From the IMG/VR virus record IMGVR_UViG_3300042691_042003, positions 124,001-188,000 of that record: a DNA stretch of 64,000 nucleotides. One strand, written 5' to 3'. Within the stretch, counting starts at the first letter, position 1, and each line of letters opens with the position of its first letter. The position numbers and the translations under genes are program-made. Positions 39,288 to 63,249 of the stretch are shown here, piece after piece. A model generated the notes under the pieces. It saw only the letters and a program-made list of their open reading frames with translations. It was not told the origin of the DNA and did not search any database.

Positions 39288-39368
39288 TGTAATATCCGTG
39301 TACCTTTTTTGTTCATTTTGATTTTTTTCTGTAGAGAATTTGTATTATATTAGCTTTATCAAATTAAT
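39288..39368 (+). promoter_or_regulatory. Class I bipartite promoter (TGTAATA box plus TTTGTATTATATTAGC core)
   Basis: Box at 39288, core at 39339 (offset 51); near-identical copies at 51638, 52131 and 53587. Confidence 0.8.
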
Positions 39369-39377
39369 TATTCTCTT

Positions 39378-39623
39378 ATGGAACAATCTCCTAAATACTC
39401 TACAGCATACGTTAACGATCTGATGCAAGATCCTGACGTTCTCGGTCTTAACCTTGCTAATGCAACTCCTCAAGTCTTAAGTCTTATTTCTCTTTGGGCT
39501 TCTAAACAAGAATTCAAAGCTGCCGAAGAAGAACGTTACGAAGATGCTGCTCGTTACCGTGATATTCTAAAATGCAAAACGGTTTTCGTTCGTAAAGTAG
39601 ATGATGGATTCGAAATAATCTAA
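39378..39623 (+). CDS. UVR (UvrB/UvrC)-motif protein
   Basis: AAEEERYEDAARYRD. Confidence 0.7.
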   Translation: MEQSPKYSTAYVNDLMQDPDVLGLNLANATPQVLSLISLWASKQEFKAAEEERYEDAARYRDILKCKTVFVRKVDDGFEII

Positions 39624-39624
39624 T

Positions 39625-40095
39625 ATGTACTGTAAATGTTCAACTCGTATACCTGAGCCTCGTCTAAAGCTAGGTTACAAAACTTGCGTAAGTTGTTCGA
39701 CCGAAGCTCGATGGTCAGGTGTTCCTGTGATTAATCATAAAACAGGCAACGAAATTCAAATCGTTAAAGACCCTGAAGTAGCTGCTGAATTCCTCGCTAA
39801 AAGTGCACGAGTAGGTTTCGGAACATTACGTGGTATGACCACGAGTTATCGAAAACCGACGAATATAGTGTCTAAAATAAAAGAAATTCCAGTTAAACCT
39901 GCACCATCTACGATTGTTTCTAGAACTATCCTGCCTAATGAATTTGAAACCGTAGGTACAGAAGTTATGAACATCTTAGAAACTGAAGGTACGGAAGCCG
40001 CATATAATCATATACAAGTATCTCTTCAAAATCGTCGAATATTTGGAATTCACGCAAATCAGCTACGTTCAATTATACAAGCTCTACAAAAATGA
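39625..40095 (+). CDS. Protein with N-terminal DksA/TraR-like C4 zinc finger
   Basis: CKC..RIPEPRL...CVSC. Confidence 0.6.
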   Translation: MYCKCSTRIPEPRLKLGYKTCVSCSTEARWSGVPVINHKTGNEIQIVKDPEVAAEFLAKSARVGFGTLRGMTTSYRKPTNIVSKIKEIPVKPAPSTIVSRTILPNEFETVGTEVMNILETEGTEAAYNHIQVSLQNRRIFGIHANQLRSIIQALQK

Positions 40096-40601
40096 TCGAG
40101 GTTTTCTTTCCTAAAACGACTTACGAAAAATATCGATACTTGGGTTCTGTTCCTTGGGACGACGAAGGAGATATTTCTAAAGCAATGCTTCCTCTCGTCC
40201 TTCTAATGGATCATAAGGCAAAACCAGGTTGGTGTCCCCGTTGGTTTCTTCGCCTTCTTCATCGAGTAGGAAATCGTAACTCTTCAGTTAGAGTTTATAA
40301 TCGAACGCTGAGTAATCTTCTCCGTCACTTAACAAAAGGTTATTTCATTTGGGATTATAAAACGAAATGGAAAGACTACGATCTACGTATATCAATTTCA
40401 GGTGATGAAGAATGTTGGTTCCTTCTTAGAGCTATCGAACAAGCTTTTTACGATAGAGGTTTTAAAGAAGAGCTAATCGAAGAGCTAAAAGATCTCGATC
40501 CTAAAGGTTATTACAAAGGACTTCCTACCGAGGTTCTGAAAGTTAAATTGCTAGATTTACAAAATCAATCTCTTGAAGATGAAGAAGAAACAGAAATTTA
40601 A
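40092..40601 (+). CDS. Hypothetical protein
   Basis: Operonic; WCPRWFLRLL. Confidence 0.65.
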   Translation: MIEVFFPKTTYEKYRYLGSVPWDDEGDISKAMLPLVLLMDHKAKPGWCPRWFLRLLHRVGNRNSSVRVYNRTLSNLLRHLTKGYFIWDYKTKWKDYDLRISISGDEECWFLLRAIEQAFYDRGFKEELIEELKDLDPKGYYKGLPTEVLKVKLLDLQNQSLEDEEETEI

Positions 40602-40866
40602 AATCGAAAATCGTAGATCAGTCTTCTCTCCTCTAGAAGATTGGTGCACATTTTCAATCGGTAAAACTCATGATTTTATTGAAGTAACCGAATGGACAAA
40701 TGGAGAAGGTTATGATGTTCAAATATGTGATTCACAAAGAACAGTCCTCTCCTCTTTTACATGGGGTCAATTTCAACTTATTAAAAAGCTAATTAAACAT
40801 TTAGATGAAAGTACCAACAATTCCTCCGAAGGAGAAAGCAGATCAGCTACTCAAATCAATTCTTAA
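40573..40866 (+). CDS. Hypothetical protein
   Basis: DFIEVTEWTNGEGYDV. Confidence 0.6.
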   Translation: MKMKKKQKFKIENRRSVFSPLEDWCTFSIGKTHDFIEVTEWTNGEGYDVQICDSQRTVLSSFTWGQFQLIKKLIKHLDESTNNSSEGESRSATQINS

Positions 40867-41053
40867 ATCAATGGGTCTAAAAACTCATCATCAAATTTCC
40901 ATTGAAGAATATCTTGATGCTCGTGATTGTGCAAATGCTGCTATTGATGCTATCTTCGATTTTATGAAAGAAGATGATGAATTGCATGATTGTGCTCATT
41001 TTGCTAATTCTGTTTGGGTTGATTATTATATGAAAGTACGTAAAGAACTATGA
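40805..41053 (+). CDS. Hypothetical protein
   Basis: PKEKA..L...A..CA..AID..YY..V..EL pattern. Confidence 0.6.
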   Translation: MKVPTIPPKEKADQLLKSILKSMGLKTHHQISIEEYLDARDCANAAIDAIFDFMKEDDELHDCAHFANSVWVDYYMKVRKEL

Positions 41054-41283
41054 ACACTATACACAAAGGAAAAATTTACAAGGATAAAGAAGGAACCTGG
41101 TTAGTTCTATCCGATGAAACAACCTATCAACTACATCCTGACGATGTTGAACAAATTCTAAAAGATTCAAGAATTTTTGATAATCTCGAAGCAAGAATTC
41201 TCAATTTTCCTGATGTTCGATTTCGAATAGAAAAACATCAGAAATTTTCAGGGTCTATAAAATACGCAAAACTAGAAGAATAA
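41050..41283 (+). CDS. Hypothetical protein
   Basis: KGKIYK...W...YQLHPDD; similar to 34774. Confidence 0.6.
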   Translation: MNTIHKGKIYKDKEGTWLVLSDETTYQLHPDDVEQILKDSRIFDNLEARILNFPDVRFRIEKHQKFSGSIKYAKLEE

Positions 41284-41465
41284 TGGACTTTATATTAGGA
41301 CTAATTACATTAGCATTAGGATTAGGAATTTACTTTGCACCAACACTTATTGCAGGTAATACAAATCATCGTCAATTTACAGGAATTTTACTTCTTAATT
41401 TATTTTTAGGATGGACATTTATTGGTTGGGTCGCAGCTCTGATCTGGGCCGTAGTAAAAGATTAA
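41283..41465 (+). CDS. imm: Superinfection immunity protein (T4 Imm family)
   Basis: IYFAPTLIA...ILLLNLFLGWTFIGWVAALIWA. Confidence 0.85.
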   Translation: MDFILGLITLALGLGIYFAPTLIAGNTNHRQFTGILLLNLFLGWTFIGWVAALIWAVVKD

Positions 41466-41466: not shown

Positions 41467-42183
41467 ATGAGTAAGAGATTTACTGATACTATCGATACTT
41501 ATTTTAAAGATATTGAGAATGTCTCTTCTCCTCTAACAAAAGAAGAAGAGAAGAAGCTTGCTATTAGAATACAAGGAGGAGATGAACGAGCCATCAATGA
41601 ACTCGTTATGCATAATCTAAAATTTGTAGTTCTGCTTGCAAATCGTTTCTCTCATTTAGGTGAAGCTCTTGACGATCTTATTCAAGAAGGAAATACCGGA
41701 CTTATTGAAGCCGCAAGAAGATTTACACCAGATAAAAATGTAAAGTTTATTACGTATGCACAATTTTGGATTCGTAAAAGATTAAACGAATTTATTGCAA
41801 GACACGGTAGAACTGTTAGAATTCCTCATAATCAGGAGTATGATGATTATAAAAAGAGGATTCGAGGAGAATCAGTTCCTGATCGATCTAATATTGAAAT
41901 AGATCGTCCTTTAGAGGAAGGAGATTCCATGACTATGGGAGATTTAATTCTTTCAGAAGAATTTTCAGATCCTTTCGAATCAGAAACCGATGATTCTCAT
42001 CTTTCAATTTTTTTAAATCAATTAAACGAAGAAGAGTTAAAAATTATTAAGCTTTTTTATGGAATTGAAGAAATAAAACCTCGTTCGACTAGAGAAATAG
42101 GAACCGAATTAAATCTAGAAGAAAGTCGAGTTAATCGAATTCTAAAAATCGCAAGAGCTAAAATGAGAAAAGTAATTAAATGA
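41467..42183 (+). CDS. Sigma-70 family factor (RpoD-like, no region 1.1)
   Basis: Y..DI...LTKEEE..LA, NLKFVV, DLIQEGN.GLIEAARRF...KFITYA.FWIR, RTVRIP, region 4 HTH. Confidence 0.9.
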   Translation: MSKRFTDTIDTYFKDIENVSSPLTKEEEKKLAIRIQGGDERAINELVMHNLKFVVLLANRFSHLGEALDDLIQEGNTGLIEAARRFTPDKNVKFITYAQFWIRKRLNEFIARHGRTVRIPHNQEYDDYKKRIRGESVPDRSNIEIDRPLEEGDSMTMGDLILSEEFSDPFESETDDSHLSIFLNQLNEEELKIIKLFYGIEEIKPRSTREIGTELNLEESRVNRILKIARAKMRKVIK

Positions 42184-42656
42184 AAAGAAAATCATTCTAC
42201 CTAATTCTACTTCTGACTTCAATTATTTGTTGTGGTCACGGACAAACGATTACCTTTATGTCTGGTATTGAGAGGGATCTCTCTTCTCAATCTCAAGCAC
42301 AAATTATACAAGGTGCACTTCCGAAAGCGAAAATTACAACATTCAAGCACACTGAAGTCGGTAAACTTATTACACATTCACGTAAGAACCCTAATTCAAT
42401 TATTATTCTTTTTTCAGCTGCTGCAAAGCATACTTATCGAGTAGTAACCGAAACAAATTCGGAAATTTGGATTGTCGAGCCTCATTACTCTTCGGCTAAA
42501 ACGATTAAAGACGCTATTAAGATAGGCTTTCCGAAGAGTCAAATTATTCTAGGACCTACGTCAATTCGAGGAGCTAATATTTCTACAGGTTGTCGAAGAA
42601 CTCCTAATGGTCTAAATCATTTTCAAGCTCTTAAATTCGTTACAACTCTTCTATGA
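42180..42656 (+). CDS. Secreted or lipoprotein hypothetical protein
   Basis: Signal peptide ending ICCG. Confidence 0.55.
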   Translation: MKRKSFYLILLLTSIICCGHGQTITFMSGIERDLSSQSQAQIIQGALPKAKITTFKHTEVGKLITHSRKNPNSIIILFSAAAKHTYRVVTETNSEIWIVEPHYSSAKTIKDAIKIGFPKSQIILGPTSIRGANISTGCRRTPNGLNHFQALKFVTTLL

Positions 42657-43228
42657 AATTCACACATATTAATCCAATACATGAAATGAAACTCTTCAAT
42701 GAAGAGATGAAGAAAGATGAAAAAATTAAAAAGGTTCGTTCTCTTCTAGAAGAAGCATTCAGAACTTTAGGTATAGAGAAAACTCCTTCAAATGAAGACA
42801 CTCCTATGAGAGTAGCTAAGATGTGGGTTAACGAACAGTTTTCTTCTCTTAATGAAACTCCTCCTTATTCAACTCTATTTGATTCCGAAGGTTATGATGA
42901 AGAAATTATCGTAAAAGATATTGAAGTAGCTACGACTTGTGAACATCACCTCCTTCCTATTATAGGAACAGCAACAGTTAGTTATATTCCTAATGGTCAT
43001 ATAATAGGTCTTTCGAAAATCAATCGAATTGTTCGTCATTTTTGTAAGAAGCCTCAAGTTCAAGAAAGACTTACCGTAGAAGTAGCCAATCATCTTAAAG
43101 AAATTCTTAACACTGAGGATGTAAAAGTTGTTATTGAAGCAAAACATTTTTGTGTTCATTTTAGAGGAATTGAGGATCATCATTCTACAACAAAAACTTC
43201 TTCTACACATGGATATTTTAAAAAATAA
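42653..43228 (+). CDS. folE: GTP cyclohydrolase I
   Basis: DTPMRVAKM, CEHHLLP, GLSKINR, PQVQERLT, HFCVHFRG. Confidence 0.93.
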   Translation: MKFTHINPIHEMKLFNEEMKKDEKIKKVRSLLEEAFRTLGIEKTPSNEDTPMRVAKMWVNEQFSSLNETPPYSTLFDSEGYDEEIIVKDIEVATTCEHHLLPIIGTATVSYIPNGHIIGLSKINRIVRHFCKKPQVQERLTVEVANHLKEILNTEDVKVVIEAKHFCVHFRGIEDHHSTTKTSSTHGYFKK

Positions 43229-43295: not shown

Positions 43296-45632
43296 ATGAA
43301 CCTTAAATCACTCATTATTGGAGCACTCCTATTCATAGTTCCAATAATATCACATTCACAAACTACAGTCACGATTGGTGGTGGTGGTACAATTACTTGT
43401 CCCAATGTTCCAACAGCTACCTGGACTACACCTCCTTCAGGAGTAACCTTTTCAAATTGGTCAAGAGGATCAGGTGTTACTTGTGCTTCCTCTTCTGATG
43501 GACTTTCAGGTAGTGGATTTAATACTACTTCTTATACAGCTTCACACACATCGAACAAATTTTTTAGATTTACTCTTACCACAAATTCAATCACATCAGT
43601 AAGAGTTTCTGCACTTACTTGGTTAACGACGGTTAGTTCAGGAGGTGCAAATTTCACTATTGCCTATCAAAATGCAGGAGGACCTCTTACTCAATTTGGT
43701 TCAACTCTAACCAATCCAATCACAAATTCATTTACTGGAACAGTTACTATCGCTCCTAGTACATCATGTATATTTTTTCTTATTCCTTCAGGGACTAATA
43801 GTTCGACTCGAACTGTAAGACTAATAAATGGATCTACAATAACTCTAAATCCAGTTCCTGTAATTAATACGAGTGGATCTCTCTCTTCTCGTTCAACAGT
43901 ATATGGAACTCCTTCTACTTCAACCTCTTTCAGCGTATCAGGAACTAATCTCACAGGTGGAATTACTATAACTCCTCCTTCTGCATACGAGGTTTCAACC
44001 TCTAACACGTTTGCAACCGTAGGAACTTCCACCTCACCACTCATCATAGGCACTTCAGGAACCGTTTCTTCTACGACTATATTTGTTCGACTGAGAGAAA
44101 CAGCTGTTCCAGGAACCTATAACTCGCAATCAATTACTCTAACTGCAACGAATGCTACGACAAGAATCGTTAATACCGCTTCTTCAGGAAATATCGTAAG
44201 TACAAAGGCACTAACCATTTCATCTCCTTCAGTTGTAACAAAAACCTACGACGGAACAAATACAGCTACGATTGTAGGAACTCTTACAGGAACTATCGGT
44301 ACCGATGTAGTAACCTTTATAGGATCCGGAACCTTCTCATCAGTAAATGCAGGAACCGGTATTTCAGTAACATCTTCTGCCACTCTTTCAGGAACTCATG
44401 CTTCTCGATATACTCTGACACAACCAACAGGTCTTTTAGGAAATATTACTAAGGCTAATCAAACCATCTCATTTGAACAACTTCCTTACAAATCTTCTTT
44501 AGATCTCCCTTTTGCTCCTATTGCAAGTGCAACTTCAAACCTACCTTTAATTGTTACCTCATCTAATTCGTCAGTGGCTTCTATACTTTCAGGAGAAATA
44601 CAAATAAATGGAATTGGAACTACGACTATTACGATTTCACAAGGAGGGGATGGAAATTGGAATCCAGCTACTTCCGTTAGTCAAGATCTAATTATAGACT
44701 ATCCAATTTCTCGTTGGTCATTCGAAACCTCAACCGTTAGTGGGATCGGACAAACACCTTCAATATCTTCTCCTTCTGCTGAGATAGGAGAGCAAAATTC
44801 CAATACCTCATTTACAGGATTTCATACATCACCTCTCACTGTTTGGACAAATTTTGTAGGCAATGGAGATGGTCGTTCAATATCTGCTGATCGTTGGACC
44901 GTAGGAGATTATTTTCAATTTACTCTCAATACGAAATACACAACAATTATCCGTCTCTCTTTCGACCAAAATTCTTCAGCAACGGGTCCTAAAGATTTCA
45001 GATTGCAATGGTCAATTGACGGAACAAACTTCACTAATATTGAAGATTATCAAATAGCATATAATACCGCTTCTAATACAGTTTATTCTTGGACGGCTAC
45101 TAATTATTTCTCTCAATCTACTCTCTCTTTCGATCTCTCTACAATAACCGAAATAAACGATCAATCTCAAGTTTTCTTTCGTCTTCTTAACACAACAAAT
45201 GGAGCTTTGCTAGGAGGAACGGTACAAACTGCAGGAACTTCACGTATAGATAATTTCTCTCTATTTGGTTCATTAGATATTCCTCTTCCTTTACAAATTC
45301 TAGATTTTAAAGGAACAGCTTATGAAAGGCAAAATTTTCTAAGATGGACTTTATCAGAACAAATATCGGTAACCGTTCAAAAATATATCAACGGTTCTTG
45401 GAAGGATCTATCTACAATTGAGGATTCTCGTTACATAGATTCTTTACCGGAAAGAATTTCATACTATCGATTAGTAACTGATTCGAATATTTCTAAGCCT
45501 ATATACATTCTCAATTCGTCTGTAGAAGGAGAAGAATTTCAATACTTCGATCTAACAGGAAGGCCTAACGAAACCTCTAAAATCCTCGTTCGTAAGTCTG
45601 CTATCGATTCTAAAATAATTATTAAGAATTAA
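43296..45632 (+). CDS. Secreted multi-domain Ser/Thr-rich protein with YDG-like domain and a degenerate T9SS-type C-terminus
   Basis: Signal peptide; KTYDGTNTA; ITKANQTISF; PLPLQILDFKG; C-terminal YFDLTGR...KIIIKN. Confidence 0.75.
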   Translation: MNLKSLIIGALLFIVPIISHSQTTVTIGGGGTITCPNVPTATWTTPPSGVTFSNWSRGSGVTCASSSDGLSGSGFNTTSYTASHTSNKFFRFTLTTNSITSVRVSALTWLTTVSSGGANFTIAYQNAGGPLTQFGSTLTNPITNSFTGTVTIAPSTSCIFFLIPSGTNSSTRTVRLINGSTITLNPVPVINTSGSLSSRSTVYGTPSTSTSFSVSGTNLTGGITITPPSAYEVSTSNTFATVGTSTSPLIIGTSGTVSSTTIFVRLRETAVPGTYNSQSITLTATNATTRIVNTASSGNIVSTKALTISSPSVVTKTYDGTNTATIVGTLTGTIGTDVVTFIGSGTFSSVNAGTGISVTSSATLSGTHASRYTLTQPTGLLGNITKANQTISFEQLPYKSSLDLPFAPIASATSNLPLIVTSSNSSVASILSGEIQINGIGTTTITISQGGDGNWNPATSVSQDLIIDYPISRWSFETSTVSGIGQTPSISSPSAEIGEQNSNTSFTGFHTSPLTVWTNFVGNGDGRSISADRWTVGDYFQFTLNTKYTTIIRLSFDQNSSATGPKDFRLQWSIDGTNFTNIEDYQIAYNTASNTVYSWTATNYFSQSTLSFDLSTITEINDQSQVFFRLLNTTNGALLGGTVQTAGTSRIDNFSLFGSLDIPLPLQILDFKGTAYERQNFLRWTLSEQISVTVQKYINGSWKDLSTIEDSRYIDSLPERISYYRLVTDSNISKPIYILNSSVEGEEFQYFDLTGRPNETSKILVRKSAIDSKIIIKN

Positions 45633-45846: not shown

Positions 45847-47751
45847 ATGAAATTAAGAAGAGTTAGCTTACGAAGCTCATCAAATATTCTAGCTAAAGGA
45901 TCTACTGCTCAAACGGGATATTTCTTAGGAGCCGGAGGAGACGGGAAGGTTGGATGGGCTTTAGGGTCTTCCGATAGAGCTGCTAATTCTACTCTAACTT
46001 ATGGAGAAGCAAAATTTCTTGCTACGAATGGATTGCTGACTGTCGGTTGTTTTTATAATATTAATTCTATTTTGTCTTATACTGGAAGAGATCCTGATGG
46101 ACAAATAATTAACATATACACGAGAGCGATTAGCTCAACTCAATTTAGTGAAAGCTGTTTTATTACGTTTTGGAATTGTGATTGGCAAGGAGTAGGAGAC
46201 TATACAGGTGCTCAAGGTAATTTTTATTCAACTCAATATCCTCAATGGAGATATGCTAAAGAAGCTCTATATGCTGAGAATGATGTAGTTATACATCGAA
46301 TATCAGAATCTGAACCTTATAGGATGTATATTTTATTAGATTCGGGAAGTCCAGCAGATCCAATAGGTCCTCAAGGTGGTTCTAGATGGAGCCTTCTTTC
46401 TTATTCTGATACTAACGGTTATATTAGAGAAATAAATGAATGTATTTGGAATTGGTCTGATAATAGATTAGAGAGTCGAAAATGTTCGAGAGGAAATGAA
46501 TATACTCTAACTAAAGACGATTGGAAATATAGAGATACAACAACCTATTTCGGTTATTTTATAGATGGTATTTTTGATCCAAACGTTTCAAATCCTATTT
46601 TACTCTTTCCTTGGGGAAGCGATAAACATAAAAACAATAAGATAATCAATTCGATTTTTTCTTCGAATTGTGATGAAGCAGAAGGTAATATTCTAATCAA
46701 CTCATCAAGAATTTATAATAATTATTACAATATCAATAATGCTAATGATACAGATCATTACATAAAAATAAATAATAATTTTTTAAGTGATCGAAGTGAC
46801 ATTACAGAAAATTTTAAAAGGGGATTTGATTATGTTATTACTCCAGAAGTTATTTTTAACGGAGACCTATCAAGAAATAAACTAACGAACGGTAGTTTTA
46901 TAAAAAGATTAGGATGTAATATTTATGGTACAACTACGAATTTTGAAATAACTAAAAATATTTTAGTCGAATCTCAATTAGGAGGTGGTGGAAATAATTA
47001 CGAACAAATATTTAGTGGAAGCTTTTATTTTAAAAATAATGTTTGTAACAAATTTAATTTTCAAGACAACATTCCCTTTCAAAATTCTAATGGAGAAATC
47101 ATGGATTTTGAAATCTCAGATAATGTCTTTAGTTATACTACTGTTGTAAATAATTCTTTTGGTTTAGTATCAATACAACAAAACGAAATAAATTATTCTA
47201 GATTTGAAGGAAATACATTAGGATATAACGGAGTCTCTTTTCTTATTTCTATCAAAAACAATTCCCTGAGCAATTTTTATTTTTACCTTTTTGATTACAA
47301 TAATAAAGACTCAGCATTTACTTTTTCAGATAATATATGTAAAGGAAGATTAGATGAAAACGATCCTACCACTACTTCAACTAAATTTGGAAATATGACA
47401 ATAGGAGGAGGCGTCGAATCTTTCTTTTCCGGTAATGTTCTTGATTCGCAAAGCTATTTTCTTGCAAATACAATTACAAACGATAGCTTAAGAGTAAGAA
47501 ATTGTCATTTTTATCCTTATTCAGGATTATTCGGATGTACATTATATGGAGGAGAAACGGTAATTTCTAATTGTATATTCAATACAACTTTAGATTTAAT
47601 AAATTTTGATGATGATCGAGTAGGTTTATACAATCTCAATTACACTAAAAATTTCTGGGATAATTCAACTAAGTCCTCTCAATTTTTATGGATTGCAAAT
47701 GACACTTCTCCTCTTTATATACAAATATATAACGTTGATGCAATTATATGA
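45847..47751 (+). CDS. Asn-rich right-handed beta-helix protein (paralog 1; probable fibre/adhesin)
   Basis: FWNCDWQGVGDY, FPWG, repeated N..I..N motifs. Confidence 0.65.
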   Translation: MKLRRVSLRSSSNILAKGSTAQTGYFLGAGGDGKVGWALGSSDRAANSTLTYGEAKFLATNGLLTVGCFYNINSILSYTGRDPDGQIINIYTRAISSTQFSESCFITFWNCDWQGVGDYTGAQGNFYSTQYPQWRYAKEALYAENDVVIHRISESEPYRMYILLDSGSPADPIGPQGGSRWSLLSYSDTNGYIREINECIWNWSDNRLESRKCSRGNEYTLTKDDWKYRDTTTYFGYFIDGIFDPNVSNPILLFPWGSDKHKNNKIINSIFSSNCDEAEGNILINSSRIYNNYYNINNANDTDHYIKINNNFLSDRSDITENFKRGFDYVITPEVIFNGDLSRNKLTNGSFIKRLGCNIYGTTTNFEITKNILVESQLGGGGNNYEQIFSGSFYFKNNVCNKFNFQDNIPFQNSNGEIMDFEISDNVFSYTTVVNNSFGLVSIQQNEINYSRFEGNTLGYNGVSFLISIKNNSLSNFYFYLFDYNNKDSAFTFSDNICKGRLDENDPTTTSTKFGNMTIGGGVESFFSGNVLDSQSYFLANTITNDSLRVRNCHFYPYSGLFGCTLYGGETVISNCIFNTTLDLINFDDDRVGLYNLNYTKNFWDNSTKSSQFLWIANDTSPLYIQIYNVDAII

Positions 47752-47765
47752 TTTAATTTTTTTAT

Positions 47766-49550: not shown

Positions 49551-49556
49551 TTTAGA

Positions 49557-51431: not shown

Positions 51432-51637
51432 AAGAGTCAAAATCTCTTCAAGTCTTCTGAGCGTAGAAAAGATATATAAAGGTCTGTGTGAAGAGCCCTC
51501 GTGCACACGAGCGTAAGAGTTCCTTCTAAGGGCCTAGATATATAAGTCTTTTCAAATTTAATCAAAGTACTCCAAGATCATCCCAATTTAAGTGTGCGCT
51601 CGCTCTTCGGGTTGATGGGCTCCCTCTCCACTCGTGA

Positions 51638-51720
51638 TGTAATATCCGTGTAATAAATTTGTTAAAAAAGATTTTTTTCTTTTGAAACTTTGTATTATAT
51701 TAGCTATATCAAATTAATAA
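51638..51720 (+). promoter_or_regulatory. Class I bipartite promoter
   Basis: TGTAATA-TCCG-TGTAATA at 51638-51655; TTTGTATTATATTAGCTATATCAAATTAATAA from 51689. Confidence 0.82.
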
Positions 51721-51725
51721 TACTT

Positions 51726-51926
51726 ATGAATCTTACACCTTCTCATGCTACTCTCCAAGATCCATTCTCACCTAAAAGAGAAATCATAACATGTGAAGTT
51801 CTATCGTGGAACACTGAAGAACGAACTCTCTTCGTAATACACACTAACGGTTTCGGTCGTTTTAAAATACATTTCAACGACGTTATCGAATTCACCTTTC
51901 CTACTTGCGTAAACGAAATTGCCTAA
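51726..51926 (+). CDS. Hypothetical early protein
   Basis: ATG 51726 preferred; the TTG at 51690 lies inside the promoter. Confidence 0.6.
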   Translation: MNLTPSHATLQDPFSPKREIITCEVLSWNTEERTLFVIHTNGFGRFKIHFNDVIEFTFPTCVNEIA

Positions 51927-51933: not shown

Positions 51934-52125
51934 ATGAATATCTTACACACTCAGTACCAGTCTCGTACTCTTCCTATCGGTTATTCAGTTTCCGATAATC
52001 TTTCACCTTCTCTCCGTTCCACTATCTGGAAACACGGTAAGAAGTACGCTTACCTTATCAATCCTATGGGTGGGATTAGAAGGGTCTCTTATTCTACACT
52101 CGAAACGATGGTCTACGGTAGATAA
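51934..52125 (+). CDS. Hypothetical early protein
   Basis: ATG 51934, or TTG 51919. Confidence 0.55.
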   Translation: MNILHTQYQSRTLPIGYSVSDNLSPSLRSTIWKHGKKYAYLINPMGGIRRVSYSTLETMVYGR

Positions 52126-52130
52126 TTGAA

Positions 52131-52213
52131 TGTAATATTCATGTAATAAAATCCATAAAATAGATTTTTCTCTTTGCGAATAAGGTATTATATTAGCTAT
52201 ATCAAATTAATAA
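52131..52213 (+). promoter_or_regulatory. Class I bipartite promoter
   Basis: TGTAATA-TTCA-TGTAATA at 52131; GTATTATATTAGCTATATCAAATTAATAA core at the same offset. Confidence 0.8.
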
Positions 52214-52216
52214 TAA

Positions 52217-53290
52217 ATGGAAAAGATTAAAGCAACCAACGCCATTCTTATCAAAGCCAAGAAACGTCACGAGGCTTCTAAATTCGCAAAGCAATGGACC
52301 ATCGATAAGCCTTACGAGAAAGGTTACATATTTAAAGGACTCTTCCGTACCGGTCAACACTGGCTCGTTCAAAAAGGAAAAGAGTACTTCATAGATCCAA
52401 TCAATCAAATGCCGAAAAGCAAACCTCAACCCACGAAAGGAACCCCTTCTATACGTCTCGTTCAAATAGCTGATCTCAACTACGACGAGAACATCTTCAA
52501 ACCACTCAAAACTGGTGATTCCATCGATTACATGTTTTCATCAGACGGTGGAATCTTCCCTGCTACTAACTACATGATTATTGGGGATCCCGGCATTGGT
52601 AAATCTACTCAAACACTCGATATACTCGCTAAGATTAAGCGAAACGATCCTACTAAGAAAGTTCTCTTCATCTCTGGTGAAATGAATGAAATTGATATGT
52701 ATGGCTACGTTAAACGTTATCCGGCTTTCGGTCGAATCCCTACTCTCTTTCTCTGCGATTACCTTGATGAAAATCCGGCTAAGGTACTCGAAGAAACCTT
52801 CAAACAAGGTTGGGATCTAATACTTATCGACTCCTTCATCGAGGTACAAGAATCTATTCAAGCTGCTACCAACATGCCTCGTACAGCTGCTGAAAAATGG
52901 ATGATCGATCTAATGGTTACGAACAACAAAGGAAACAACCGAGAAAAACGTTACACTTCATTCCTTGCAATTCAACAAGTCACGAAAGGGGGTAACTTCG
53001 TCGGATCTAATAAATTGAAACACAACACTACCGGTATGATCGAGCTACGATACTCTTCTGAATTCTCTGGGGATCGTTTTGCTAAGGTAACTAAAAACCG
53101 TAGGGGCTTCAAATACGAGAAAATCTTCTTCTCACTCGACAATCCTAATCAAGTAGAATACGATGAAAAACGTCTACAACGAGATGAAGATATTCGTCAA
53201 CGTCTTCAAAAGGAAAAGGATATTCTCCTTTCCGAAGAAGAAAAATTCAATCAAATCTTTGGTCTTAACACAACAACAGTAGAAGAGTAA
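52217..53290 (+). CDS. RadA/Sms-like RecA-fold ATPase
   Basis: Walker A IGDPGIGKST, LFISGEM, Walker B LILIDS, QVTKGG.FVGS..LKH, KNRRG; no Lon domain. Confidence 0.78.
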   Translation: MEKIKATNAILIKAKKRHEASKFAKQWTIDKPYEKGYIFKGLFRTGQHWLVQKGKEYFIDPINQMPKSKPQPTKGTPSIRLVQIADLNYDENIFKPLKTGDSIDYMFSSDGGIFPATNYMIIGDPGIGKSTQTLDILAKIKRNDPTKKVLFISGEMNEIDMYGYVKRYPAFGRIPTLFLCDYLDENPAKVLEETFKQGWDLILIDSFIEVQESIQAATNMPRTAAEKWMIDLMVTNNKGNNREKRYTSFLAIQQVTKGGNFVGSNKLKHNTTGMIELRYSSEFSGDRFAKVTKNRRGFKYEKIFFSLDNPNQVEYDEKRLQRDEDIRQRLQKEKDILLSEEEKFNQIFGLNTTTVEE

Positions 53291-53291
53291 T

Positions 53292-53591
53292 ATGAACGAT
53301 TTCTTTAACGAAGAGTTTCTCTCAGCCGATGAAGATCCTATTGGTAATGATTTTCTCAGAGAGGTTTATGAAGCCGAACTCGAACAAAGTATGAGATGGT
53401 CTTACTCACGAATTGAAAAGATGGGTATTGACAAATGGTTTCAGATTTTCCCTTTCTCACAAAAGAAGAAGGAACGTATAGTAGAAAACATGATGCTTTG
53501 GTTTGCTCATGAAGATCGAGAAGAATATGAAAAATCTGCTTATCTCAAGTCTGGTCTAGACAAGCTCAAGCAATCACCCGTACAGATGTAA
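53292..53591 (+). CDS. Acidic protein with UVR-like motif
   Basis: HEDREEYEKSAYLK. Confidence 0.6.
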   Translation: MNDFFNEEFLSADEDPIGNDFLREVYEAELEQSMRWSYSRIEKMGIDKWFQIFPFSQKKKERIVENMMLWFAHEDREEYEKSAYLKSGLDKLKQSPVQM

Positions 53592-53669
53592 TATCCGTGT
53601 AATAAATTCATTAAAATAGATTTTTTCTTGCCAGACTTTTGTATTATATTAGCTTTATCAAATTAATAA
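53587..53669 (+). promoter_or_regulatory. Class I bipartite promoter
   Basis: TGTAATA-TCCG-TGTAATA at 53587; TTTGTATTATATTAGC at 53638. Confidence 0.82.
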
Positions 53670-53672
53670 TAA

Positions 53673-53885
53673 ATGGTTCACACTATTAAAGCTACGCAAT
53701 CTCCAACTTTCGAAGAATTCTATTGCATCGACTCTTACAACGAAAGGTCCCTCTATCGAATAAGAAAAATCGAAGGACGATGGTCTCTAACAAAACCAAG
53801 TGCAGGAAAGGAGATCTTCCTCTCATCACACGTCTCAAAGAAACAAGCTACACAAGCTGCCGAATACCACGCTAAAAGTTTTTAA
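53673..53885 (+). CDS. Hypothetical early protein
   Basis: Immediately follows the promoter. Confidence 0.6.
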   Translation: MVHTIKATQSPTFEEFYCIDSYNERSLYRIRKIEGRWSLTKPSAGKEIFLSSHVSKKQATQAAEYHAKSF

Positions 53886-53887
53886 AA

Positions 53888-53947
53888 AAAAGTTAAAATA
53901 AATTTTTTTCTTTGCGAAATTTGTTTTATATTAGCTATATCAAATTA
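53888..53947 (+). promoter_or_regulatory. Class I promoter variant (no TGTAATA box)
   Basis: AAAAGTTAAAATAAATTTTTTTCTTTGCGAAATTTGTTTTATATTAGC; near-identical to 63202-63249. Confidence 0.75.
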
Positions 53948-53965
53948 AAATAAAAAGAACTCACT

Positions 53966-54238
53966 ATGCATGTACAATCTCTTTACGACGAAATCTTCAA
54001 ACCTGAACAAATCCGTCGAGATCAACGTAATCGAATCCGAGAAATCGTCAAAACTAATTCGGCCAATCCTTCAATCGCAATTGGACTCGTCCGAGACTAC
54101 TGTAAAGGCAATTCGAAAGTAGGTTTCATCCGGTTCGATAATCCTACCAACCCTCAAAACATCCTCGTTTTCACCGAAGGAACTACCTACTACTATCGTC
54201 TCACCGAAACGAAACGAATCGAACCAGCAACTCTTTGA
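53966..54238 (+). CDS. Hypothetical early protein
   Basis: Follows the promoter. Confidence 0.6.
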   Translation: MHVQSLYDEIFKPEQIRRDQRNRIREIVKTNSANPSIAIGLVRDYCKGNSKVGFIRFDNPTNPQNILVFTEGTTYYYRLTETKRIEPATL

Positions 54239-54265
54239 AACTCCACTCAAGTAAATACATATAAT
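54237..54265 (+). promoter_or_regulatory. Candidate class II promoter GAAAC-N16-CATATAAT
   Basis: Repeated motif before ATG 54286. Confidence 0.5.
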
Positions 54266-54285
54266 AAATAACTTCTAAAACAATT

Positions 54286-55371: not shown

Positions 55372-55420
55372 CTTTTCCGTGAAGCCACACGTTCTAAACG
55401 TGTTTTAATTTGATCAACAG

Positions 55421-55444
55421 AGGACTCCTACTAGGGGTCCTTTT
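55421..55444 (+). terminator. Intrinsic terminator
   Basis: AGGACTCC-TACTA-GGGGTCCT followed by TTT. Confidence 0.7.
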
Positions 55445-55450
55445 GTTGTC

Positions 55451-55925
55451 AGTACTTCTAGTGGGTAAGACCATTAGTAGAGTGGGTCTTACTCGTACTA
55501 GATGGATTACCACTTTAGTACACTACTCTCTAGTACTAGTAGTGGTGCTTAGCTAGTCTGTGCCATTAGTAGACACCACTTTAAAAGACTAGTAATGAAA
55601 GGCACTTTAGTACACTACCAGCTAGTGTTAGTAGTGAACTAGACCGGATAGGTACCATTAGTAGTGCACTAGTACTGATGTACACTACTAGTTAGATTGA
55701 TTAGACTACTAGTAGAGGATTGATCTAATTGAATTAGACCTAGTTGGTTATTTTTGATTATTGTAGAAGTGGTTATAGGGTGTGCTAGATCAGTATAGAC
55801 CAAAAAAGACCAATCTAGATGGTTTTAGACTATATAGGATGGTATAGAGTGGTTTTAGGGTCATATAAGGCCATTTTAGACTATTTTAGCCATTCTAGAT
55901 GGTTTTTAACCACTTTAGTGGGTAT
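55451..55925. repeat. Non-coding CTAG-rich region with a degenerate 92-bp tandem repeat
   Basis: CCATTAGTAG at 55471, 55563 and 55655; CACTTTAGTACACTAC at 55511 and 55603; TCTAGATGGTTTT at 55814 and 55894. Confidence 0.8.
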
Positions 55926-56257
55926 AGCTATGCATATCAGATCCCCAGGGTCAAGTAGCGTTAACGTCACGAAGGTCATCCTAGCCGGCTCGAGGCCATG
56001 CGATTCCGGAACTCGCCGATCCACGAAACCTTTGGCCTGACATTGGAGATCTCTGGTAATCTCGTTCTCTGGTATCTTCCTCTCAATACCCTCTGTTTCA
56101 CTCCGTTACTCACCGATTTCCCCTTTAGTAATACCTTATATACGAGTATCCGTTGTACCTGAGGACCCTCTCGATGTTCACCCCACGACCTTTAGTCACT
56201 CTGCCTTAATCCGTTATGAAAAATTTTTTTTCCAGATTTCTCGGATAAATCGTATAC

Positions 56258-60896: not shown

Positions 60897-60904
60897 TTAT
60901 ATTC

Positions 60905-61102
60905 ATGAAATTTTACACATATCGAGAATTTTTAAGAGAAACAGCATATAAAGAAGGAAGTAGAAAACCTACGGCTGAAGAAAGAAAAATGTGTAAATCA
61001 CCTGAAGGATTTAATCAGATAAATCATTGTAAAGCTTTAGGACTTATTCCTAGAGCAGATGGAACTAAAAAAGTAAGTGCTAAATACGGAGGAGATGAGT
61101 AA
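60905..61102 (+). CDS. Small protein with capsid-targeting-like leader
   Basis: MKFYTYREFLRE; CKSPEGFNQINHC. Confidence 0.65.
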   Translation: MKFYTYREFLRETAYKEGSRKPTAEERKMCKSPEGFNQINHCKALGLIPRADGTKKVSAKYGGDE

Positions 61103-61823
61103 TGAAAAAGATATACAAAGACTAGAAGATTCTTTAAGAGGAAAAAAGGTCTTACTAATAACGACCTCAAATCGTTGGTCAGGACATGATGAAAAACCTA
61201 AATCGTCTAGACTTGCTGAAGATCTGGCTAGTAGAATAGGTGCTACAATAATCGATGCTTCAAAATTGAAGATTTATCCTTGCGAAGGAAATGTTTCTAC
61301 CGTTAACGGAAATAATTGCGGAACCGTAGATTCGGTTTTAAAAGATAAGACGAAGAATCCTACAGGTCATCATCGTTGCTGGGTTAATATTAATAATCCT
61401 GACGACGAACTTTGGAAAATAAGCAAAGAGATATTTGAAGCTGATTCGGTTATATTTTTCGCTTCAGTGAGATGGGGTCAAACCAATTCTATATATCAGA
61501 AACTAATTGAACGCTTGAATTGGCTAGAGAATCGCTGGGCAACTTTGAATGAGAGTAATATATTATCTAATAAGGAGGCAGGCATTGTCCTAGTTGGCCA
61601 CAATTGGAACGGAGTAGCTGTTTTAGAAACACAAAAGCAGGTTCTACAATTTTATGGATTTAAAGTTCCTACCGAGCTATCGTTTAATTGGCAATGGACT
61701 ACCGATCCTTTTGATGAATCCGAAGAAGGATATATTCAAGATCCTAAAGATTTTAAAGAAGATTTCGATCTTGGATCTAATGCATTGAAAGAATCATTCA
61801 AAAACTTCTTTAAAAGACAATGA
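61095..61823 (+). CDS. Flavodoxin-fold NAD(P)H-dependent FMN reductase / iron-sulfur flavoprotein-like protein
   Basis: TTSNR...SSRLA, CEGNVS..C..C, ADSVIF..SVRWG..S.YQKLIERL; ATG 61095 preferred over GTG 61077. Confidence 0.75.
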   Translation: MSNEKDIQRLEDSLRGKKVLLITTSNRWSGHDEKPKSSRLAEDLASRIGATIIDASKLKIYPCEGNVSTVNGNNCGTVDSVLKDKTKNPTGHHRCWVNINNPDDELWKISKEIFEADSVIFFASVRWGQTNSIYQKLIERLNWLENRWATLNESNILSNKEAGIVLVGHNWNGVAVLETQKQVLQFYGFKVPTELSFNWQWTTDPFDESEEGYIQDPKDFKEDFDLGSNALKESFKNFFKRQ

Positions 61824-62617
61824 AAAACTTAAAAACTTACGATAGCTGGTTAAACGAATCAACAGTTAATCCTATTGTTGAGGATCTACTTACTCGAGCA
61901 GAACCTACTATTCAACAGATGGTTAATAAATCTAGAGAGGCTTATGTAAAACAATACGAGCGTGAATGGACTAAATACGATGAAACGATTACTAGATTAA
62001 TCATAATCTCTAATATGGTTCGATCTTTTGAAATTTACACGAAACATAATGATAGACTCGTTAACTTTACAGTAAAAGGATCTCCAAAAGGATCTATGGT
62101 TATCTCTTCACAAATTGATAGAGATGATGTACCTCATTATTTAGATACTGAGGTAATTTATGCAGGAGGTTATAATATACAGGCTCTTCATTATCGTTAT
62201 ATTACGAAAACTAATCTAACTAAAACTGGAGCTGATACTAAAACCAAAGAGATAGGAGAAAAAATCAAGAAGCTTTCTAAACTAGAAAAGATCAATAAAG
62301 AAATCGAAGGTTATCAAGTCAGAATAAAGGATAATGAAGAGAATATTGCTAAAAATTCGGTTTTATCTGACGAAGAAATAAAGGATATTCTTCGAAAGGG
62401 AGAGTATGGTAGTACTATTGATACTACATGGGAGGATGTTGTTCGGAACAAAGGACATTACGATAGCAGAGAAGAATTTGAAACTTCTCAAAAGCAATAC
62501 ATCGCTGATAAGATAGTATTTTGGAAAAGGGTAAATATTGAATGGAAAATTGAGAATAATACAGCTCTCAAAAAGAATATTGACAAATTAAATAAGAAGT
62601 TAGAGACACTAATATGA
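61820..62617 (+). CDS. Coiled-coil protein with capsid-targeting-like leader
   Basis: MKNLKTYDSWLNES; GGYNIQALHYRY. Confidence 0.7.
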   Translation: MKNLKTYDSWLNESTVNPIVEDLLTRAEPTIQQMVNKSREAYVKQYEREWTKYDETITRLIIISNMVRSFEIYTKHNDRLVNFTVKGSPKGSMVISSQIDRDDVPHYLDTEVIYAGGYNIQALHYRYITKTNLTKTGADTKTKEIGEKIKKLSKLEKINKEIEGYQVRIKDNEENIAKNSVLSDEEIKDILRKGEYGSTIDTTWEDVVRNKGHYDSREEFETSQKQYIADKIVFWKRVNIEWKIENNTALKKNIDKLNKKLETLI

Positions 62618-63210
62618 AAAATTTAAAAACCTACGATAGCTGGTTGAATGAATCTTCAGGAGATTTACTTAAACCGAGAAGAGGAAAACCTTTACATTTC
62701 GATCATCGTAGATATCCAGAGCTAGCAGGTGAGCTATTCAATCTTATTACTATTGCATATTCGGAAATAGGAGGTCATGCTAAAATAAAATCTCCAGAAG
62801 ATATATTCTCTGATCCTGATTGGAATTTCTGGGAAGGTACTGATATTCACGGATCTCAAGATTTTGATATTGTCATATTTGGACAGAAGACTAAATTTGG
62901 TGTTAAATTTTCCGGGGTAGGACATGATGGAGCAAAAGATTCTAAGAAAGAGTATCTAGACGATCTAGGATCAGATCTTAAGAATTTAGGTTATTACATC
63001 GAATCTTCTGGAAAATTTGCTGAGATTCTTATGAATAAGTACGGATGTCCTGTTATAGAAGACGAAGAAACTGTTGTTAAAGTTCTTGGTAAACAAGTTC
63101 AATGGATAGGTAAATCTTCAAATCCAGAACATACAGGTAATGGATGGTACATACGTAATATTGGAGGACATCCTCATGAAAAGATTTTAATAGGTCGACC
63201 AAAAAGTTAA
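62614..63210 (+). CDS. Hypothetical protein with an identical leader
   Basis: MKNLKTYDSWLNES; Y..IGGH, GVGHDG. Confidence 0.7.
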   Translation: MKNLKTYDSWLNESSGDLLKPRRGKPLHFDHRRYPELAGELFNLITIAYSEIGGHAKIKSPEDIFSDPDWNFWEGTDIHGSQDFDIVIFGQKTKFGVKFSGVGHDGAKDSKKEYLDDLGSDLKNLGYYIESSGKFAEILMNKYGCPVIEDEETVVKVLGKQVQWIGKSSNPEHTGNGWYIRNIGGHPHEKILIGRPKS

Positions 63211-63249
63211 AATAAATTTTTTTCTTTACGATATTTGTTTTATATTAGC
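63202..63249 (+). promoter_or_regulatory. Class I promoter variant
   Basis: AAAAGTTAAAATAAATTTTTTTCTTTACGATATTTGTTTTATATTAGC; two differences from 53888-53935. Confidence 0.75.

What the first reader, a model, noticed from the sequence alone, without database searches (positions are those of the whole stretch)
39288..63249. Six copies of a probable early promoter; four carry an upstream 11-bp-period direct repeat at an invariant 51-nt offset
Seen: the core GT(A/T)TTATATTAGC, usually as TTTGT(A/T)TTATATTAGC(T/A)..., at 39339, 51689, 52182, 53638, 53920 and 63234. In four cases TGTAATA-N4-TGTAATA (second half degenerate at 39288) begins exactly 51 nt upstream (39288, 51638, 52131, 53587). The other two share a different upstream AAAAGTTAAAATAAA tract. 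Known: TATATTAG is one base from the Bacteroidota TAnnTTTG element, and direct repeats with an 11-bp period are the binding geometry of OmpR/PhoB regulators (Pho box half-site CTGT(C/A)AT). Inference: early genes wired to a host two-component regulator, possibly phosphate sensing, or to a phage activator, giving two regulatory subclasses.
Basis: partly seen in the sequence, partly recalled or inferred. Interest (0 to 1): 0.68.

Follow-up and report, generated by a model that had tools for sequence, protein, structure and literature searches.

The report
Jumbo phage early promoter cassettes
The six repeats are real and belong to a family of 24 bounded promoter cassettes (about 86 bp) in a 246-kb T4-like phage of Bacteroidota; they most likely start early transcription with the host RNA polymerase, and nothing ties them to phosphate sensing.

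Summary
The window is bases 124,001-188,000 of a 246-kb T4-like jumbo myovirus whose signals point to a Bacteroidota host. The six cores belong to 24 cassettes genome-wide. All are on the coding strand and intergenic, and the core ends 15-31 nt before an ATG. Downstream genes are unrelated apart from one duplicated pair.

Each cassette is sharply bounded, from 56 nt before the core to 30 nt after. It has four parts:
- 0-3 units of TGT(T)AATA spaced 11 bp apart.
- A T-run at the -33 position, which in 5 copies is the loop of a GC hairpin whose arms differ between copies.
- A -7 box: TATATTAG in 17 copies, TATATTTA in one, and the canonical Bacteroidota TATATTTG in 6.
- A conserved leader, ATCAAATTAA.

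A separate ATATAAT(A/T) motif and a gp55-like sigma mark the late genes, so these cassettes are early or middle promoters. Related freshwater phages carry the same core with a TTGTTAATAAC box. Metagenome contigs break or join at the cassettes.

Best reading: host-sigma early promoter/terminator cassettes, analogous to the T4 PeSL elements. The 11-bp repeat is real and resembles ArcA-type response-regulator sites. Its position, the downstream genes and the relatives do not support PhoB or phosphate control. What binds the repeat is unknown, and no RNA data exist.

The parts
39287..39380 (+). Cassette 1. Box ATGTAATATCCGTGTACC at 39287-39304 ('CC' subtype); T-run 39322-39328; -7 box TATATTAG 39346-39353; predicted +1 at A39358; ATG 39378. 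It heads an operon that includes the sigma gene at 41467-42183 and ends with the GTP cyclohydrolase I gene (42653-43228).
51637..51728 (+). Cassette 2. Three phased units: TGTAATAT at 51638, TGTAATAA at 51649, TGTTAAAAA at 51660. T-run 51672-51678; -7 box 51696-51703; ATG 51726 (66-aa ORF).
52130..52219 (+). Cassette 3. Two units at 52131 and 52142; -7 box 52189-52196; ATG 52217 (357-aa P-loop ATPase, DnaB/RecA-like).
53586..53675 (+). Cassette 4. Two units at 53587 and 53598. The TAA inside ATGTAA is the stop codon of the upstream ORF 53292-53591. -7 box 53645-53652; ATG 53673 (70-aa ORF).
53892..53968 (+). Cassette 5. No distal box; proximal GTTAAAATAAA at 53892 followed by the T-run; -7 box 53927-53934; ATG 53966 (90-aa ORF). 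A metagenome contig joins 53621 to 53904, which leaves out the ORF between cassettes 4 and 5.
63206..63269 (+). Cassette 6. No distal box; GTTAAAATAAA at 63206; -7 box 63241-63248; ATG 63267 (UPF0227/esterase-like protein).
126..201 (+). Cassette 7, not in the finding. Box ATGTTAATAAC at 126-136; canonical -7 box TATATTTG at 174-181; ATG 199 of the ECF-type sigma gene (199-807).
41467..42183 (+). Phage sigma-70-family factor (238 aa; regions 1.2, 2 and 4; RpoS/RpoD-like), expressed from the cassette-1 operon.

Best explanation
The repeats are the promoter cassettes of the early (pre-late) genes of a T4-like jumbo phage whose host is probably in the Bacteroidota.

Each cassette is about 86 bp. 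TATATT(A/T)G is the -7 element of the Bacteroidota housekeeping sigma. Using the F. johnsoniae rule of 4-5 nt from the box to the start, transcription would begin at the A of ATCAAATTAA. The T-run then lies at -36 to -31, the -33 position. The result is a short A-rich leader without a Shine-Dalgarno sequence.

In some copies the T-run is the loop of a GC hairpin followed by Ts, so the cassette would also terminate the upstream transcript.

Upstream, 0-3 units of TGT(T)AATA start about 70, 59 and 48 nt before the predicted start, on one face of the helix. They are most likely a contact site for RNA polymerase alpha-CTD or for a tandem-binding activator or repressor that tunes sub-classes.

Because the cassettes are near-identical and flank small unrelated ORFs, they also serve as recombination points that shuffle genes between related phages, as T4 PeSLs do.

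Shown: the anatomy, the counts, conservation in relatives and the separate late class. Inferred: the start site, the polymerase/sigma used, the timing, the binder and the recombination role.
For: Copies and context. There are 24 copies, all on the + strand and intergenic, with the core ending 15-31 nt before an ATG. Downstream proteins are unrelated except one duplicated pair.

Conservation pattern. Similarity is sharply bounded (p-56 to p+30, where p is the first G of the core GTWTTATATTAGC). Conserved blocks are separated by variable spacers of fixed length. That pattern indicates selection on blocks and on spacing.

Match to host promoters. Six copies have a perfect TAnnTTTG and 17 are one base off. 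The F. johnsoniae rules are TAHHTTTG, 4-5 nt to the start, and AT-rich stretches at -18 and -28 (PMC6847099).

Host signals. Only 16 of 310 genes have a Shine-Dalgarno-like 4-mer and the leaders are A-rich. The tail-sheath gene's nearest isolated kin are Tenacibaculum and Flavobacterium phages. Sigma-70-type promoters are not enriched.

T4-like late programme. There is a gp55-like late sigma plus T4-type portal, protease and major head protein. A distinct motif ATATAAT(A/T) lies within 40 nt of 35 gene starts against 4 expected, including the portal and tail-sheath genes.

No phage polymerase or T4 middle-mode factors. No phage RNA polymerase, MotA or AsiA was found.

Hairpins. The arms differ between copies while the T-run loop stays fixed.

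Relatives. Phages about 70% identical in coding DNA carry the same core, T-run and leader, with a TTGTTAATAAC box at -44 or -54/-55. Tenacibaculum phage PTm1 has elements of hairpin + TATATTTG + short leader.

Shuffling. Metagenome contigs pile up on the cassettes, run into unlike sequence at them, and one joins 53621 to 53904, dropping the ORF between two cassettes. PeSLs are described in PMC2839356 and PMC4122927.
Against: - No RNA data exist. Start sites, timing and the sigma used are all inferred.
- In 17 of 24 copies the -6 position is A, whereas T-6 is nearly invariant in F. johnsoniae promoters.
- Conservation runs to about +14, which is unusual for a housekeeping-sigma promoter.
- The phage encodes two further sigma factors whose promoters are unassigned.
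- Only 5 of 24 copies have a strong hairpin.
- The recombination evidence is one contig joint plus loose ends from short metagenome contigs of related strains, where repeats can mislead.
- The host is not identified.
Confidence: 0.6

Rival explanations
1. The AGC class (TATATTAGC plus the conserved leader) are middle promoters read by a phage sigma, either the 238-aa RpoS/RpoD-like factor or the ECF-type factor. Only the six TATATTTG copies would be true host-sigma early promoters.
For: The two core variants are kept apart in this phage and in its relatives. The A at -6 departs from a near-invariant host position. Conservation past +1 is typical of phage-specific promoters. The ECF-type sigma gene sits behind a perfect host-type box. 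Two phage sigmas have no assigned promoter.
Against: The 238-aa sigma gene is itself behind an AGC-class cassette, which creates a bootstrapping problem. AGC and TGT cores share the same upstream modules, T-run and spacing. ECF promoters normally have -35/-10 elements unlike this. The ATATAAT(A/T) class is at least as good a candidate for the RpoD-like sigma.
Confidence: 0.22
2. One reading: the phased TGT(T)AATA units bind a host OmpR/PhoB-family response regulator, so early transcription is gated by a host signal (phosphate in the reader's version).
For: Up to three units occur at an exact 11-bp period, 12 times here and again in relatives, sometimes shifted by one helical turn. The units and their spacing closely match the ArcA array ATGTTAAAAA-1-ATGTTAAAAA, 11 bp centre to centre, with natural variants TGTTA, TGTAA and TGTCA (PMC4173790). 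The phage has no regulator of its own of this family.
Against: - The box lies about -71 to -54 from the predicted start, not over the -35/-33 as Pho boxes do (Pho-box position is from established knowledge).
- The downstream genes with an identified product are replication, sigma or esterase-like genes, and the rest are small ORFs of unknown function; none is a phosphate gene.
- Five cassettes work from the same core without the box.
- Gating the sigma operon and a replication ATPase on host starvation would be costly for a lytic phage.
- To my knowledge ArcA is not known outside Gammaproteobacteria.
- An attempt to find the triple repeat in bacterial genomes gave only noise.

PhoB or phosphate specifically: about 0.03.
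Confidence: 0.12
3. The repeats have no regulatory meaning. They are leftovers of segmental duplication or a small mobile element spreading in intergenic DNA.
For: One three-gene block with its cassettes is duplicated (203150-203958 and 205534-205999 in genome coordinates). Several class I boxes are identical.
Against: Of 24 downstream genes, 22 have no paralogue behind another cassette. Orientation and distance to the ATG are fixed. Conserved blocks alternate with variable spacers of constant length. Orthologous genes in 70%-identical relatives keep the cassette. There are no terminal inverted repeats or target duplications.
Confidence: 0.03
4. They are promoters for a phage-encoded RNA polymerase, as in phiKZ-like jumbo phages, whose early consensus as I recall it (TATATTAC) looks similar.
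For: The resemblance of TATATTAGC to the phiKZ early motif (from memory, not checked here). Conservation extends across the start site.
Against: No Rpb1, Rpb2 or T7-type polymerase domains were found in six frames (for the tool's control genomes also gave no match, so that result does not show absence). Three sigma factors imply use of the host core enzyme. The large unannotated ORFs at 45847-51431 are three paralogues with a late-type motif before the first, no match to any solved structure, and beta-helix/CBM leads for the one tested.
Confidence: 0.03

Closest known systems
PeSL (promoter-early stem-loop) cassettes of T4-like phages RB49/phi1, PST and nt-1 (PMC2839356, PMC4122927)
   Same: Both are composite intergenic cassettes of similar size (about 86 bp here, about 100 bp for PeSLs). 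They run from around the upstream stop codon through an AT-rich region and a host-type early promoter, with a stem-loop placed within or next to it, and the start codon follows shortly after. Both are repeated many times in front of small unrelated ORFs in a T4-like genome. Differences between related phages map to the cassettes.
   Different: The promoter grammar is Bacteroidota-type (-7 TAnnTTTG-like, T-run at -33, no Shine-Dalgarno) rather than sigma-70. Only about a fifth of copies have a strong hairpin. There is an extra upstream array of 11-bp-phased TGT(T)AATA units. Mini-circles and promoter or terminator activity have not been tested.
Bacteroidota housekeeping-sigma promoter, -33 TTTG / -7 TAnnTTTG (TAHHTTTG in F. 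johnsoniae, PMC6847099)
   Same: Six copies match the -7 box perfectly and 17 match at 7 of 8 positions. The sequence is T/AT-rich at -18 and -33. The predicted leader lengths (about 12-28 nt) lie within the reported range (87% of leaders over 10 nt, mean 33 nt).
   Different: A replaces the near-invariant T at -6 in most copies. The -33 position is a T-run, not TTTG. Conservation continues to about +14 and to -71.
ArcA-P direct-repeat binding sites of E. coli (PMC4173790), and OmpR/PhoB-family sites in general
   Same: Both have 10-bp units of the form ATGT(T/A)AA(T/A)A(A/T) separated by one base (11 bp centre to centre), in arrays of 1-3 units sometimes displaced by a whole turn.
   Different: No ArcA-type protein is known for the presumed host phylum or found in the phage. 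ArcA sites mostly overlap promoters and repress, whereas these lie upstream of the -33 position. Binding has not been tested.
T4 early promoters with UP-like upstream A/T tracts, and T4 MotA-dependent middle promoters
   Same: Phage promoters for the host polymerase that are conserved far upstream of the core elements. A second sequence block upstream defines a sub-class.
   Different: The phage has no MotA or AsiA homologue. The box is at about -60, not -30. What Bacteroidota alpha-CTD recognises is not known to me.

Membership tests
Bacteroidota sigma-A promoter | -7 element TAnnTTTG (TAHHTTTG) | tested here: inconclusive
   Perfect in 6 of 24 copies (TATATTTG). 17 copies have TATATTAG and one has TATATTTA, while T-6 and G-5 are near-invariant in F. 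johnsoniae.
Bacteroidota sigma-A promoter | Transcription starts 4-5 nt after the -7 box, by host holoenzyme | not testable with these tools
   No RNA run holds the phage. The runs laid were all contigs, including one labelled RNA-Seq that the tool judged probably DNA.
Bacteroidota sigma-A promoter | -33 element TTTG about 19-21 nt upstream of the -7 box | tested here: inconclusive
   A conserved T-run followed by C occupies -36 to -30. A TTTG occurs only 12 nt upstream, in some copies.
PeSL cassette | Host-type early promoter combined with a stem-loop terminator in one conserved intergenic motif | tested here: inconclusive
   Strong hairpins (z of -4 to -8) with differing arms and a T tail occur in 5 of 24 own copies and in several relatives. 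The other copies have only weak A/T pairing.
PeSL cassette | Many copies flanking small unrelated ORFs in a T4-like genome | tested here: met
   24 copies, with downstream proteins mostly 30-174 aa and unrelated. T4-type core genes and a gp55-like sigma are present.
PeSL cassette | Indels or replacements between related phages end at the cassettes; mini-circles form | tested here: inconclusive
   One contig joint, 53621 to 53904, plus loose ends and depth peaks at the cassettes. Between contigs of relatives, the similarities apart from overlapping pieces of the same contigs are almost all cassette-sized stretches. Mini-circles cannot be tested here.
Pho box / PhoB regulon | Two 7-bp direct repeats with a 4-bp spacer | tested here: met
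   TGTAATA-N4-TGTAATA in 5 of 12 boxes; TGTA-N7-TGTA in all 12.
Pho box / PhoB regulon | The box replaces the -35 element, about 10 bp upstream of the -10 (from established knowledge of E. coli pho promoters) | tested here: not met
   The box spans about -71 to -54 from the predicted start and lies upstream of the T-run at -33.
Pho box / PhoB regulon | Controls phosphate-acquisition genes | tested here: not met
   The downstream genes with an identified product are sigma, P-loop ATPase and esterase-like genes; the rest are small ORFs of unknown function. No pstS or phoA-type gene was seen.
ArcA-type direct-repeat site | 10-bp ATGTTAAAAA-like units at 11 bp centre to centre, two or more units | tested here: met
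   ATGTAATATC-c-GTGTAATAAA-t-TTGTTAAAAA at 51637-51669. Units lie at -54, -43 and -32 from the core, compared with PMC4173790.
ArcA-type direct-repeat site | Bound by a phosphorylated OmpR-family regulator | not testable with these tools
   The phage has no Response_reg match and only a sub-threshold Trans_reg_C match. The host is unknown.
T4 MotA-dependent middle promoter | MotA and AsiA genes are present and the box is at -30 | tested here: not met
   No MotCF or AsiA match. The box lies at about -60.

The most novel reading that the evidence does not exclude
The phased TGT(T)AATA units are operators for a tandem-binding winged-helix regulator, either a host OmpR-family response regulator or an unrecognised phage protein. 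Combinations of one, two or three units would then sort the early genes of a whole clade of Bacteroidota jumbo phages into signal-dependent sub-classes. That would be a promoter-recruitment scheme functionally parallel to T4 MotA but built differently.
Probability: 0.15. Interest if true: 0.7.

Novelty: new variant of a known kind. Interest (0 to 1): 0.42.

Why it matters
I found no description of transcription signals for Bacteroidota jumbo phages in the papers searched.

This family gives a ready-made, testable set of signals: a -7 variant, a -33 T-run, an embedded terminator, a conserved leader and a phased upstream array. It would help annotate early, middle and late genes in related uncultivated phages. 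It could also supply compact strong promoter/terminator parts for Flavobacterium or Bacteroides genetics.

If the shuffling role holds, PeSL-type modular exchange reaches beyond phages of Proteobacteria.

If the upstream units bind a regulator, that would be a new way for a phage to grade early expression.

Tried and rejected
- **Close relatives in phage collections.** Megablast of 15.5 kb against the phage collection found no match. An exact 22-nt core scan of IMG/VR found none. An 18-nt scan gave 33 single hits, taken as chance.
- **Relatives of the ATPase.** Two contigs at 48% identity; the one whose upstream region was read (L018) has no cassette.
- **Bacterial genomes.** The core has no match.
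- **RNA evidence.** No RNA holder was found. All laid runs were contigs, so there are no starts or strands.
- **Is the class I box an RNA hairpin?** Only 1 of 12 copies folds well, so this was rejected. There is no consistent covariation between the N3 bases and the bases before ATG.
- **Is the ATG-TAA in the box a functional stop or mini-ORF?** The upstream ORF ends there in 5 of 12 copies, about what frame chance gives.
- **A second promoter formed by the box and the T-run.** The spacing and the absent G at -5 do not fit.
- **Phage factors sought and not found:** MotA, AsiA, RegA, Response_reg, Trans_reg_C (one sub-threshold match only) and RNA polymerase domains.
- **Other scans.** Rfam and tRNA scans of the window found nothing. 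Sigma-70-type promoters are not enriched.

Full report
**1. Observation**

GTWTTATATTAGC occurs six times in the window, all on the + strand, at 39342, 51692, 52185, 53641, 53923 and 63237. Chance expectation is 0.02.

TGTAATA-N4-TGTAATA is exact at 51638, 52131 and 53587. At 39288 the second half reads TGTACCT. In each case it starts 51 nt before TTTGT. The other two copies share AAAAGTTAAAATAAATTTTTTTCTTT.

- a T-run, GATTTTTTTCT;
- a leader, TATCAAATTAA(T/A)AATA, that runs up to the ATG.

**2. Genomic setting**

The window is bases 124,001-188,000 of a 246,081-bp virus record with terminal repeats. Nearly all genes are on the + strand.

The phage is a T4-like jumbo myovirus. The evidence:
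- a tail sheath and a 3,175-aa fibre protein;
- T4-type portal, prohead protease and major head protein, a gp46-like nuclease, and a gp55-like late sigma.

The sheath gene's nearest kin are uncultured huge phages and Tenacibaculum, Flavobacterium and Prevotella (Lak) phages.

Several signals point to a Bacteroidota host:
- only 16 of 310 genes have a Shine-Dalgarno-like 4-mer, and the leaders are A-rich and G-poor;
- sigma-70-type promoters are not enriched;
- one protein has a sub-threshold T9SS sorting-domain match.

The phage has three sigma genes:
- a 238-aa RpoS/RpoD-like factor at window 41467-42183;
- an ECF-type factor at 199-807;
- the gp55-like factor outside the window.

No RNA polymerase, MotA, AsiA, RegA or response-regulator domain was found. 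For the T7-type polymerase family the tool's control genomes also gave no match, so that result does not show absence.

**3. The whole family**

Mismatch and profile scans of the genome find 24 cassettes. All are on the + strand and intergenic. The core ends 15-31 nt before the first ATG.

There are two core classes:
- 18 AGC-class cores: 17 read TTATATTAGC and one (205228) reads TTATATTTAC.
- 6 TGT cores, TTATATTTGT, including one in the window at 170-182. TATATTTG is a perfect Bacteroidota -7 box.

The downstream proteins are unrelated. Only one pair is paralogous, and it belongs to a duplicated three-gene block.

Pairwise identity between copies is at background (about 27%) outside p-56 to p+30, where p is the first G of the core GTWTTATATTAGC. 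Inside, conserved blocks alternate with variable spacers of fixed length. That pattern argues for selection on the blocks and on their spacing, not only recent copying.

**4. Reading the core**

In F. johnsoniae the -7 element is TAHHTTTG, with T-12, A-11, T-8, T-7, T-6 and G-5 nearly invariant. The start lies 4-5 nt downstream, and AT-rich stretches sit at -18 and -28 (PMC6847099).

Setting the G of TATATT(A/T)G to -5 gives these positions:
- +1 falls on the A of ATCAAATTAA;
- the T-run falls at -36 to -31, the -33 position;
- TTTGTAT falls at -19 to -13;
- leaders are about 12-28 nt.

Two features do not fit the host consensus. The A at -6 in 17 copies departs from a near-invariant position. 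Conservation to about +14 is unusual for a housekeeping promoter. Both are counted against the model.

**5. A separate late class**

ATATAAT(A/T), usually preceded by C or T, lies within 40 nt of 35 gene starts against 4 expected. These include the portal and tail-sheath genes. This motif resembles the T4 late promoter TATAAATA (established knowledge). Together with the gp55-like sigma it marks the late class.

The cassettes are therefore a pre-late class. They head small ORFs of unknown function, a P-loop ATPase, a DNA-ligase-like gene (judged from its N-terminal sequence; no family search was run on it), an exonuclease, and both of the other sigma genes.

**6. Upstream modules**

- Twelve cassettes carry ATGTAATAT-N3-TGTA starting at p-55. 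In five the second unit is TGTAATAA (p-43), and two of those have a third unit, TGTTAAAAA (p-32). In seven the box continues TGTACCTTTTTT.
- Seven cassettes carry a single (A)TGTTAATAA at p-43 or p-44.
- Five have no distal box.

Counted from the predicted start, the units begin at about -70, -59 and -48, a period of 11 bp. The box is not an RNA hairpin: only 1 of 12 copies folds well. The upstream ORF ends at the TAA inside the box in 5 of 12 copies, about what reading-frame chance would give.

**7. Hairpins**

Five own copies have strong GC hairpins whose arms differ between copies. These are 63429, 95727, 188664, 220162 and 227190 in genome coordinates. The fixed T-run forms the loop (or the 3' arm in one copy), and Ts follow the stem. 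This is a terminator built into the promoter, as described for PeSLs. The other copies have only weak A/T pairing.

**8. Relatives**

No close relative was found in the phage collections.

A metagenome scan followed by a profile search found contigs of related phages that are about 66-78% identical in coding DNA. They carry:
- both core variants;
- the T-run and the leader;
- differing hairpin arms;
- a box A(A/T)TGTTAATAAC at -44 (nine cases), at -54 or -55 (three), or in tandem (L128).

The ATGTAATAT form was seen only in this genome. The orthologue of the ATPase gene has the TTGTTAATAAC box where this phage has the two-unit box. A more distant contig, L064, keeps the arrangement of hairpin + TTATATTAGC + TATCAAAATC.

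Tenacibaculum phage PTm1, which has a cultured Flavobacteriaceae host, has elements of hairpin + TATATTTG + short leader.

**9. Shuffling**

When contigs of four public runs were laid on 50001-56000:
- depth peaked at the cassette bins;
- many contigs matched a cassette and then ran into unlike sequence;
- one contig joined 53621 to 53904, equivalent T-run positions of two neighbouring cassettes, leaving out ORF 53673-53885.

Among the contigs of relatives, apart from overlapping pieces of the same contigs, almost the only shared stretches are 80-115 bp long, the size of a cassette.

This fits PeSL-mediated exchange (PMC2839356, PMC4122927). It rests on short contigs and one joint, so it is an indication and not proof.

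**10. What binds the units?**

The unit sequence and spacing closely resemble ArcA direct repeats. Those are ATGTTAAAAA-1-ATGTTAAAAA, 11 bp centre to centre, with 1-3 extra units and natural variants TGTTA, TGTAA and TGTCA (PMC4173790).

The PhoB/phosphate step does not hold:
- the box lies upstream of the -33 position, not in its place;
- no phosphate gene is controlled;
- the box is absent from five cassettes that have the same core;
- it is replaced by another sequence in relatives.

An attempt to look for such arrays in bacterial genomes returned only noise. Contact with alpha-CTD, a host regulator, or an unrecognised phage protein all remain open.

**11. Verdict**

The finding is a real and much larger family of composite early-promoter cassettes. 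They are ordinary in kind (phage promoters; PeSL-like). They are new in their Bacteroidota grammar and in the phased upstream array.

The RNA polymerase and sigma used, the timing, the binder and the recombination role are all inferred. No transcript data exist for this phage.

Noticed in passing
window 13499-14731 (+): The phage carries a gene whose product matches the RuBisCO large-subunit catalytic domain (Pfam E = 1e-32) and weakly matches the N-terminal domain. It may be a RuBisCO-like protein.
   Followed up: no
window 15954, 16419, 21197, 33633, 43264, 45814, 54259, 56518, 57931 (+), and genome-wide: A second promoter-like motif, ATATAAT(A/T), lies 10-40 nt before 35 gene starts (4 expected), including the portal and tail-sheath genes. 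It is the likely late class, to go with the gp55-like sigma at L004:16031-16387.
   Followed up: partly
window 42653-43228 and 43296-45632 (+): A GTP cyclohydrolase I (FolE) gene is followed by a 778-aa protein with a YDG/SRA-like domain. This hints at 7-deazaguanine-type DNA modification and a reader of modified bases.
   Followed up: no
window 45847-51431 (+): Three tandem paralogous ORFs of 594-634 aa match no family or solved structure. The first is preceded by a terminator hairpin and a late-type motif, and Atlas leads for that first ORF (the only one queried) point to beta-helix/CBM phage proteins (tail fibre or spike?).
   Followed up: partly
L010:5490-5887 (G000 225490-225887) and L009 (five tRNAs): ARAGORN calls a tmRNA with a 29-residue tag peptide and five tRNAs (two Met, two Leu, one Arg) in the region rich in cassettes.
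   Followed up: no
G000 about 47860-47920 (inverted), 101750-101800 and 191120-191170: An element of about 40 nt, CATATAACCATTACAAGGATTTCAGGTAAAGAAGAATA, is seen in three intergenic regions. It is unexplained.
   Followed up: no
window 4000-14000: A block of very low G+C (21-25%) holds about a dozen ORFs of roughly 180-350 aa (most 220-300), tightly packed or overlapping. An all-against-all BLAST found no paralogy among them at E below 1e-5.
   Followed up: partly
window 17510-18694 (+): The thymidylate synthase is 394 aa and matches the family in three separate stretches, which suggests insertions in the enzyme.
   Followed up: no
G000 203150-203958 and 205534-205999; also window 40092-41465 and G000 204638-207937: There are segmental duplications of small early genes together with their cassettes. 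Three genes of the sigma operon have paralogues near 205-208 kb.
   Followed up: partly
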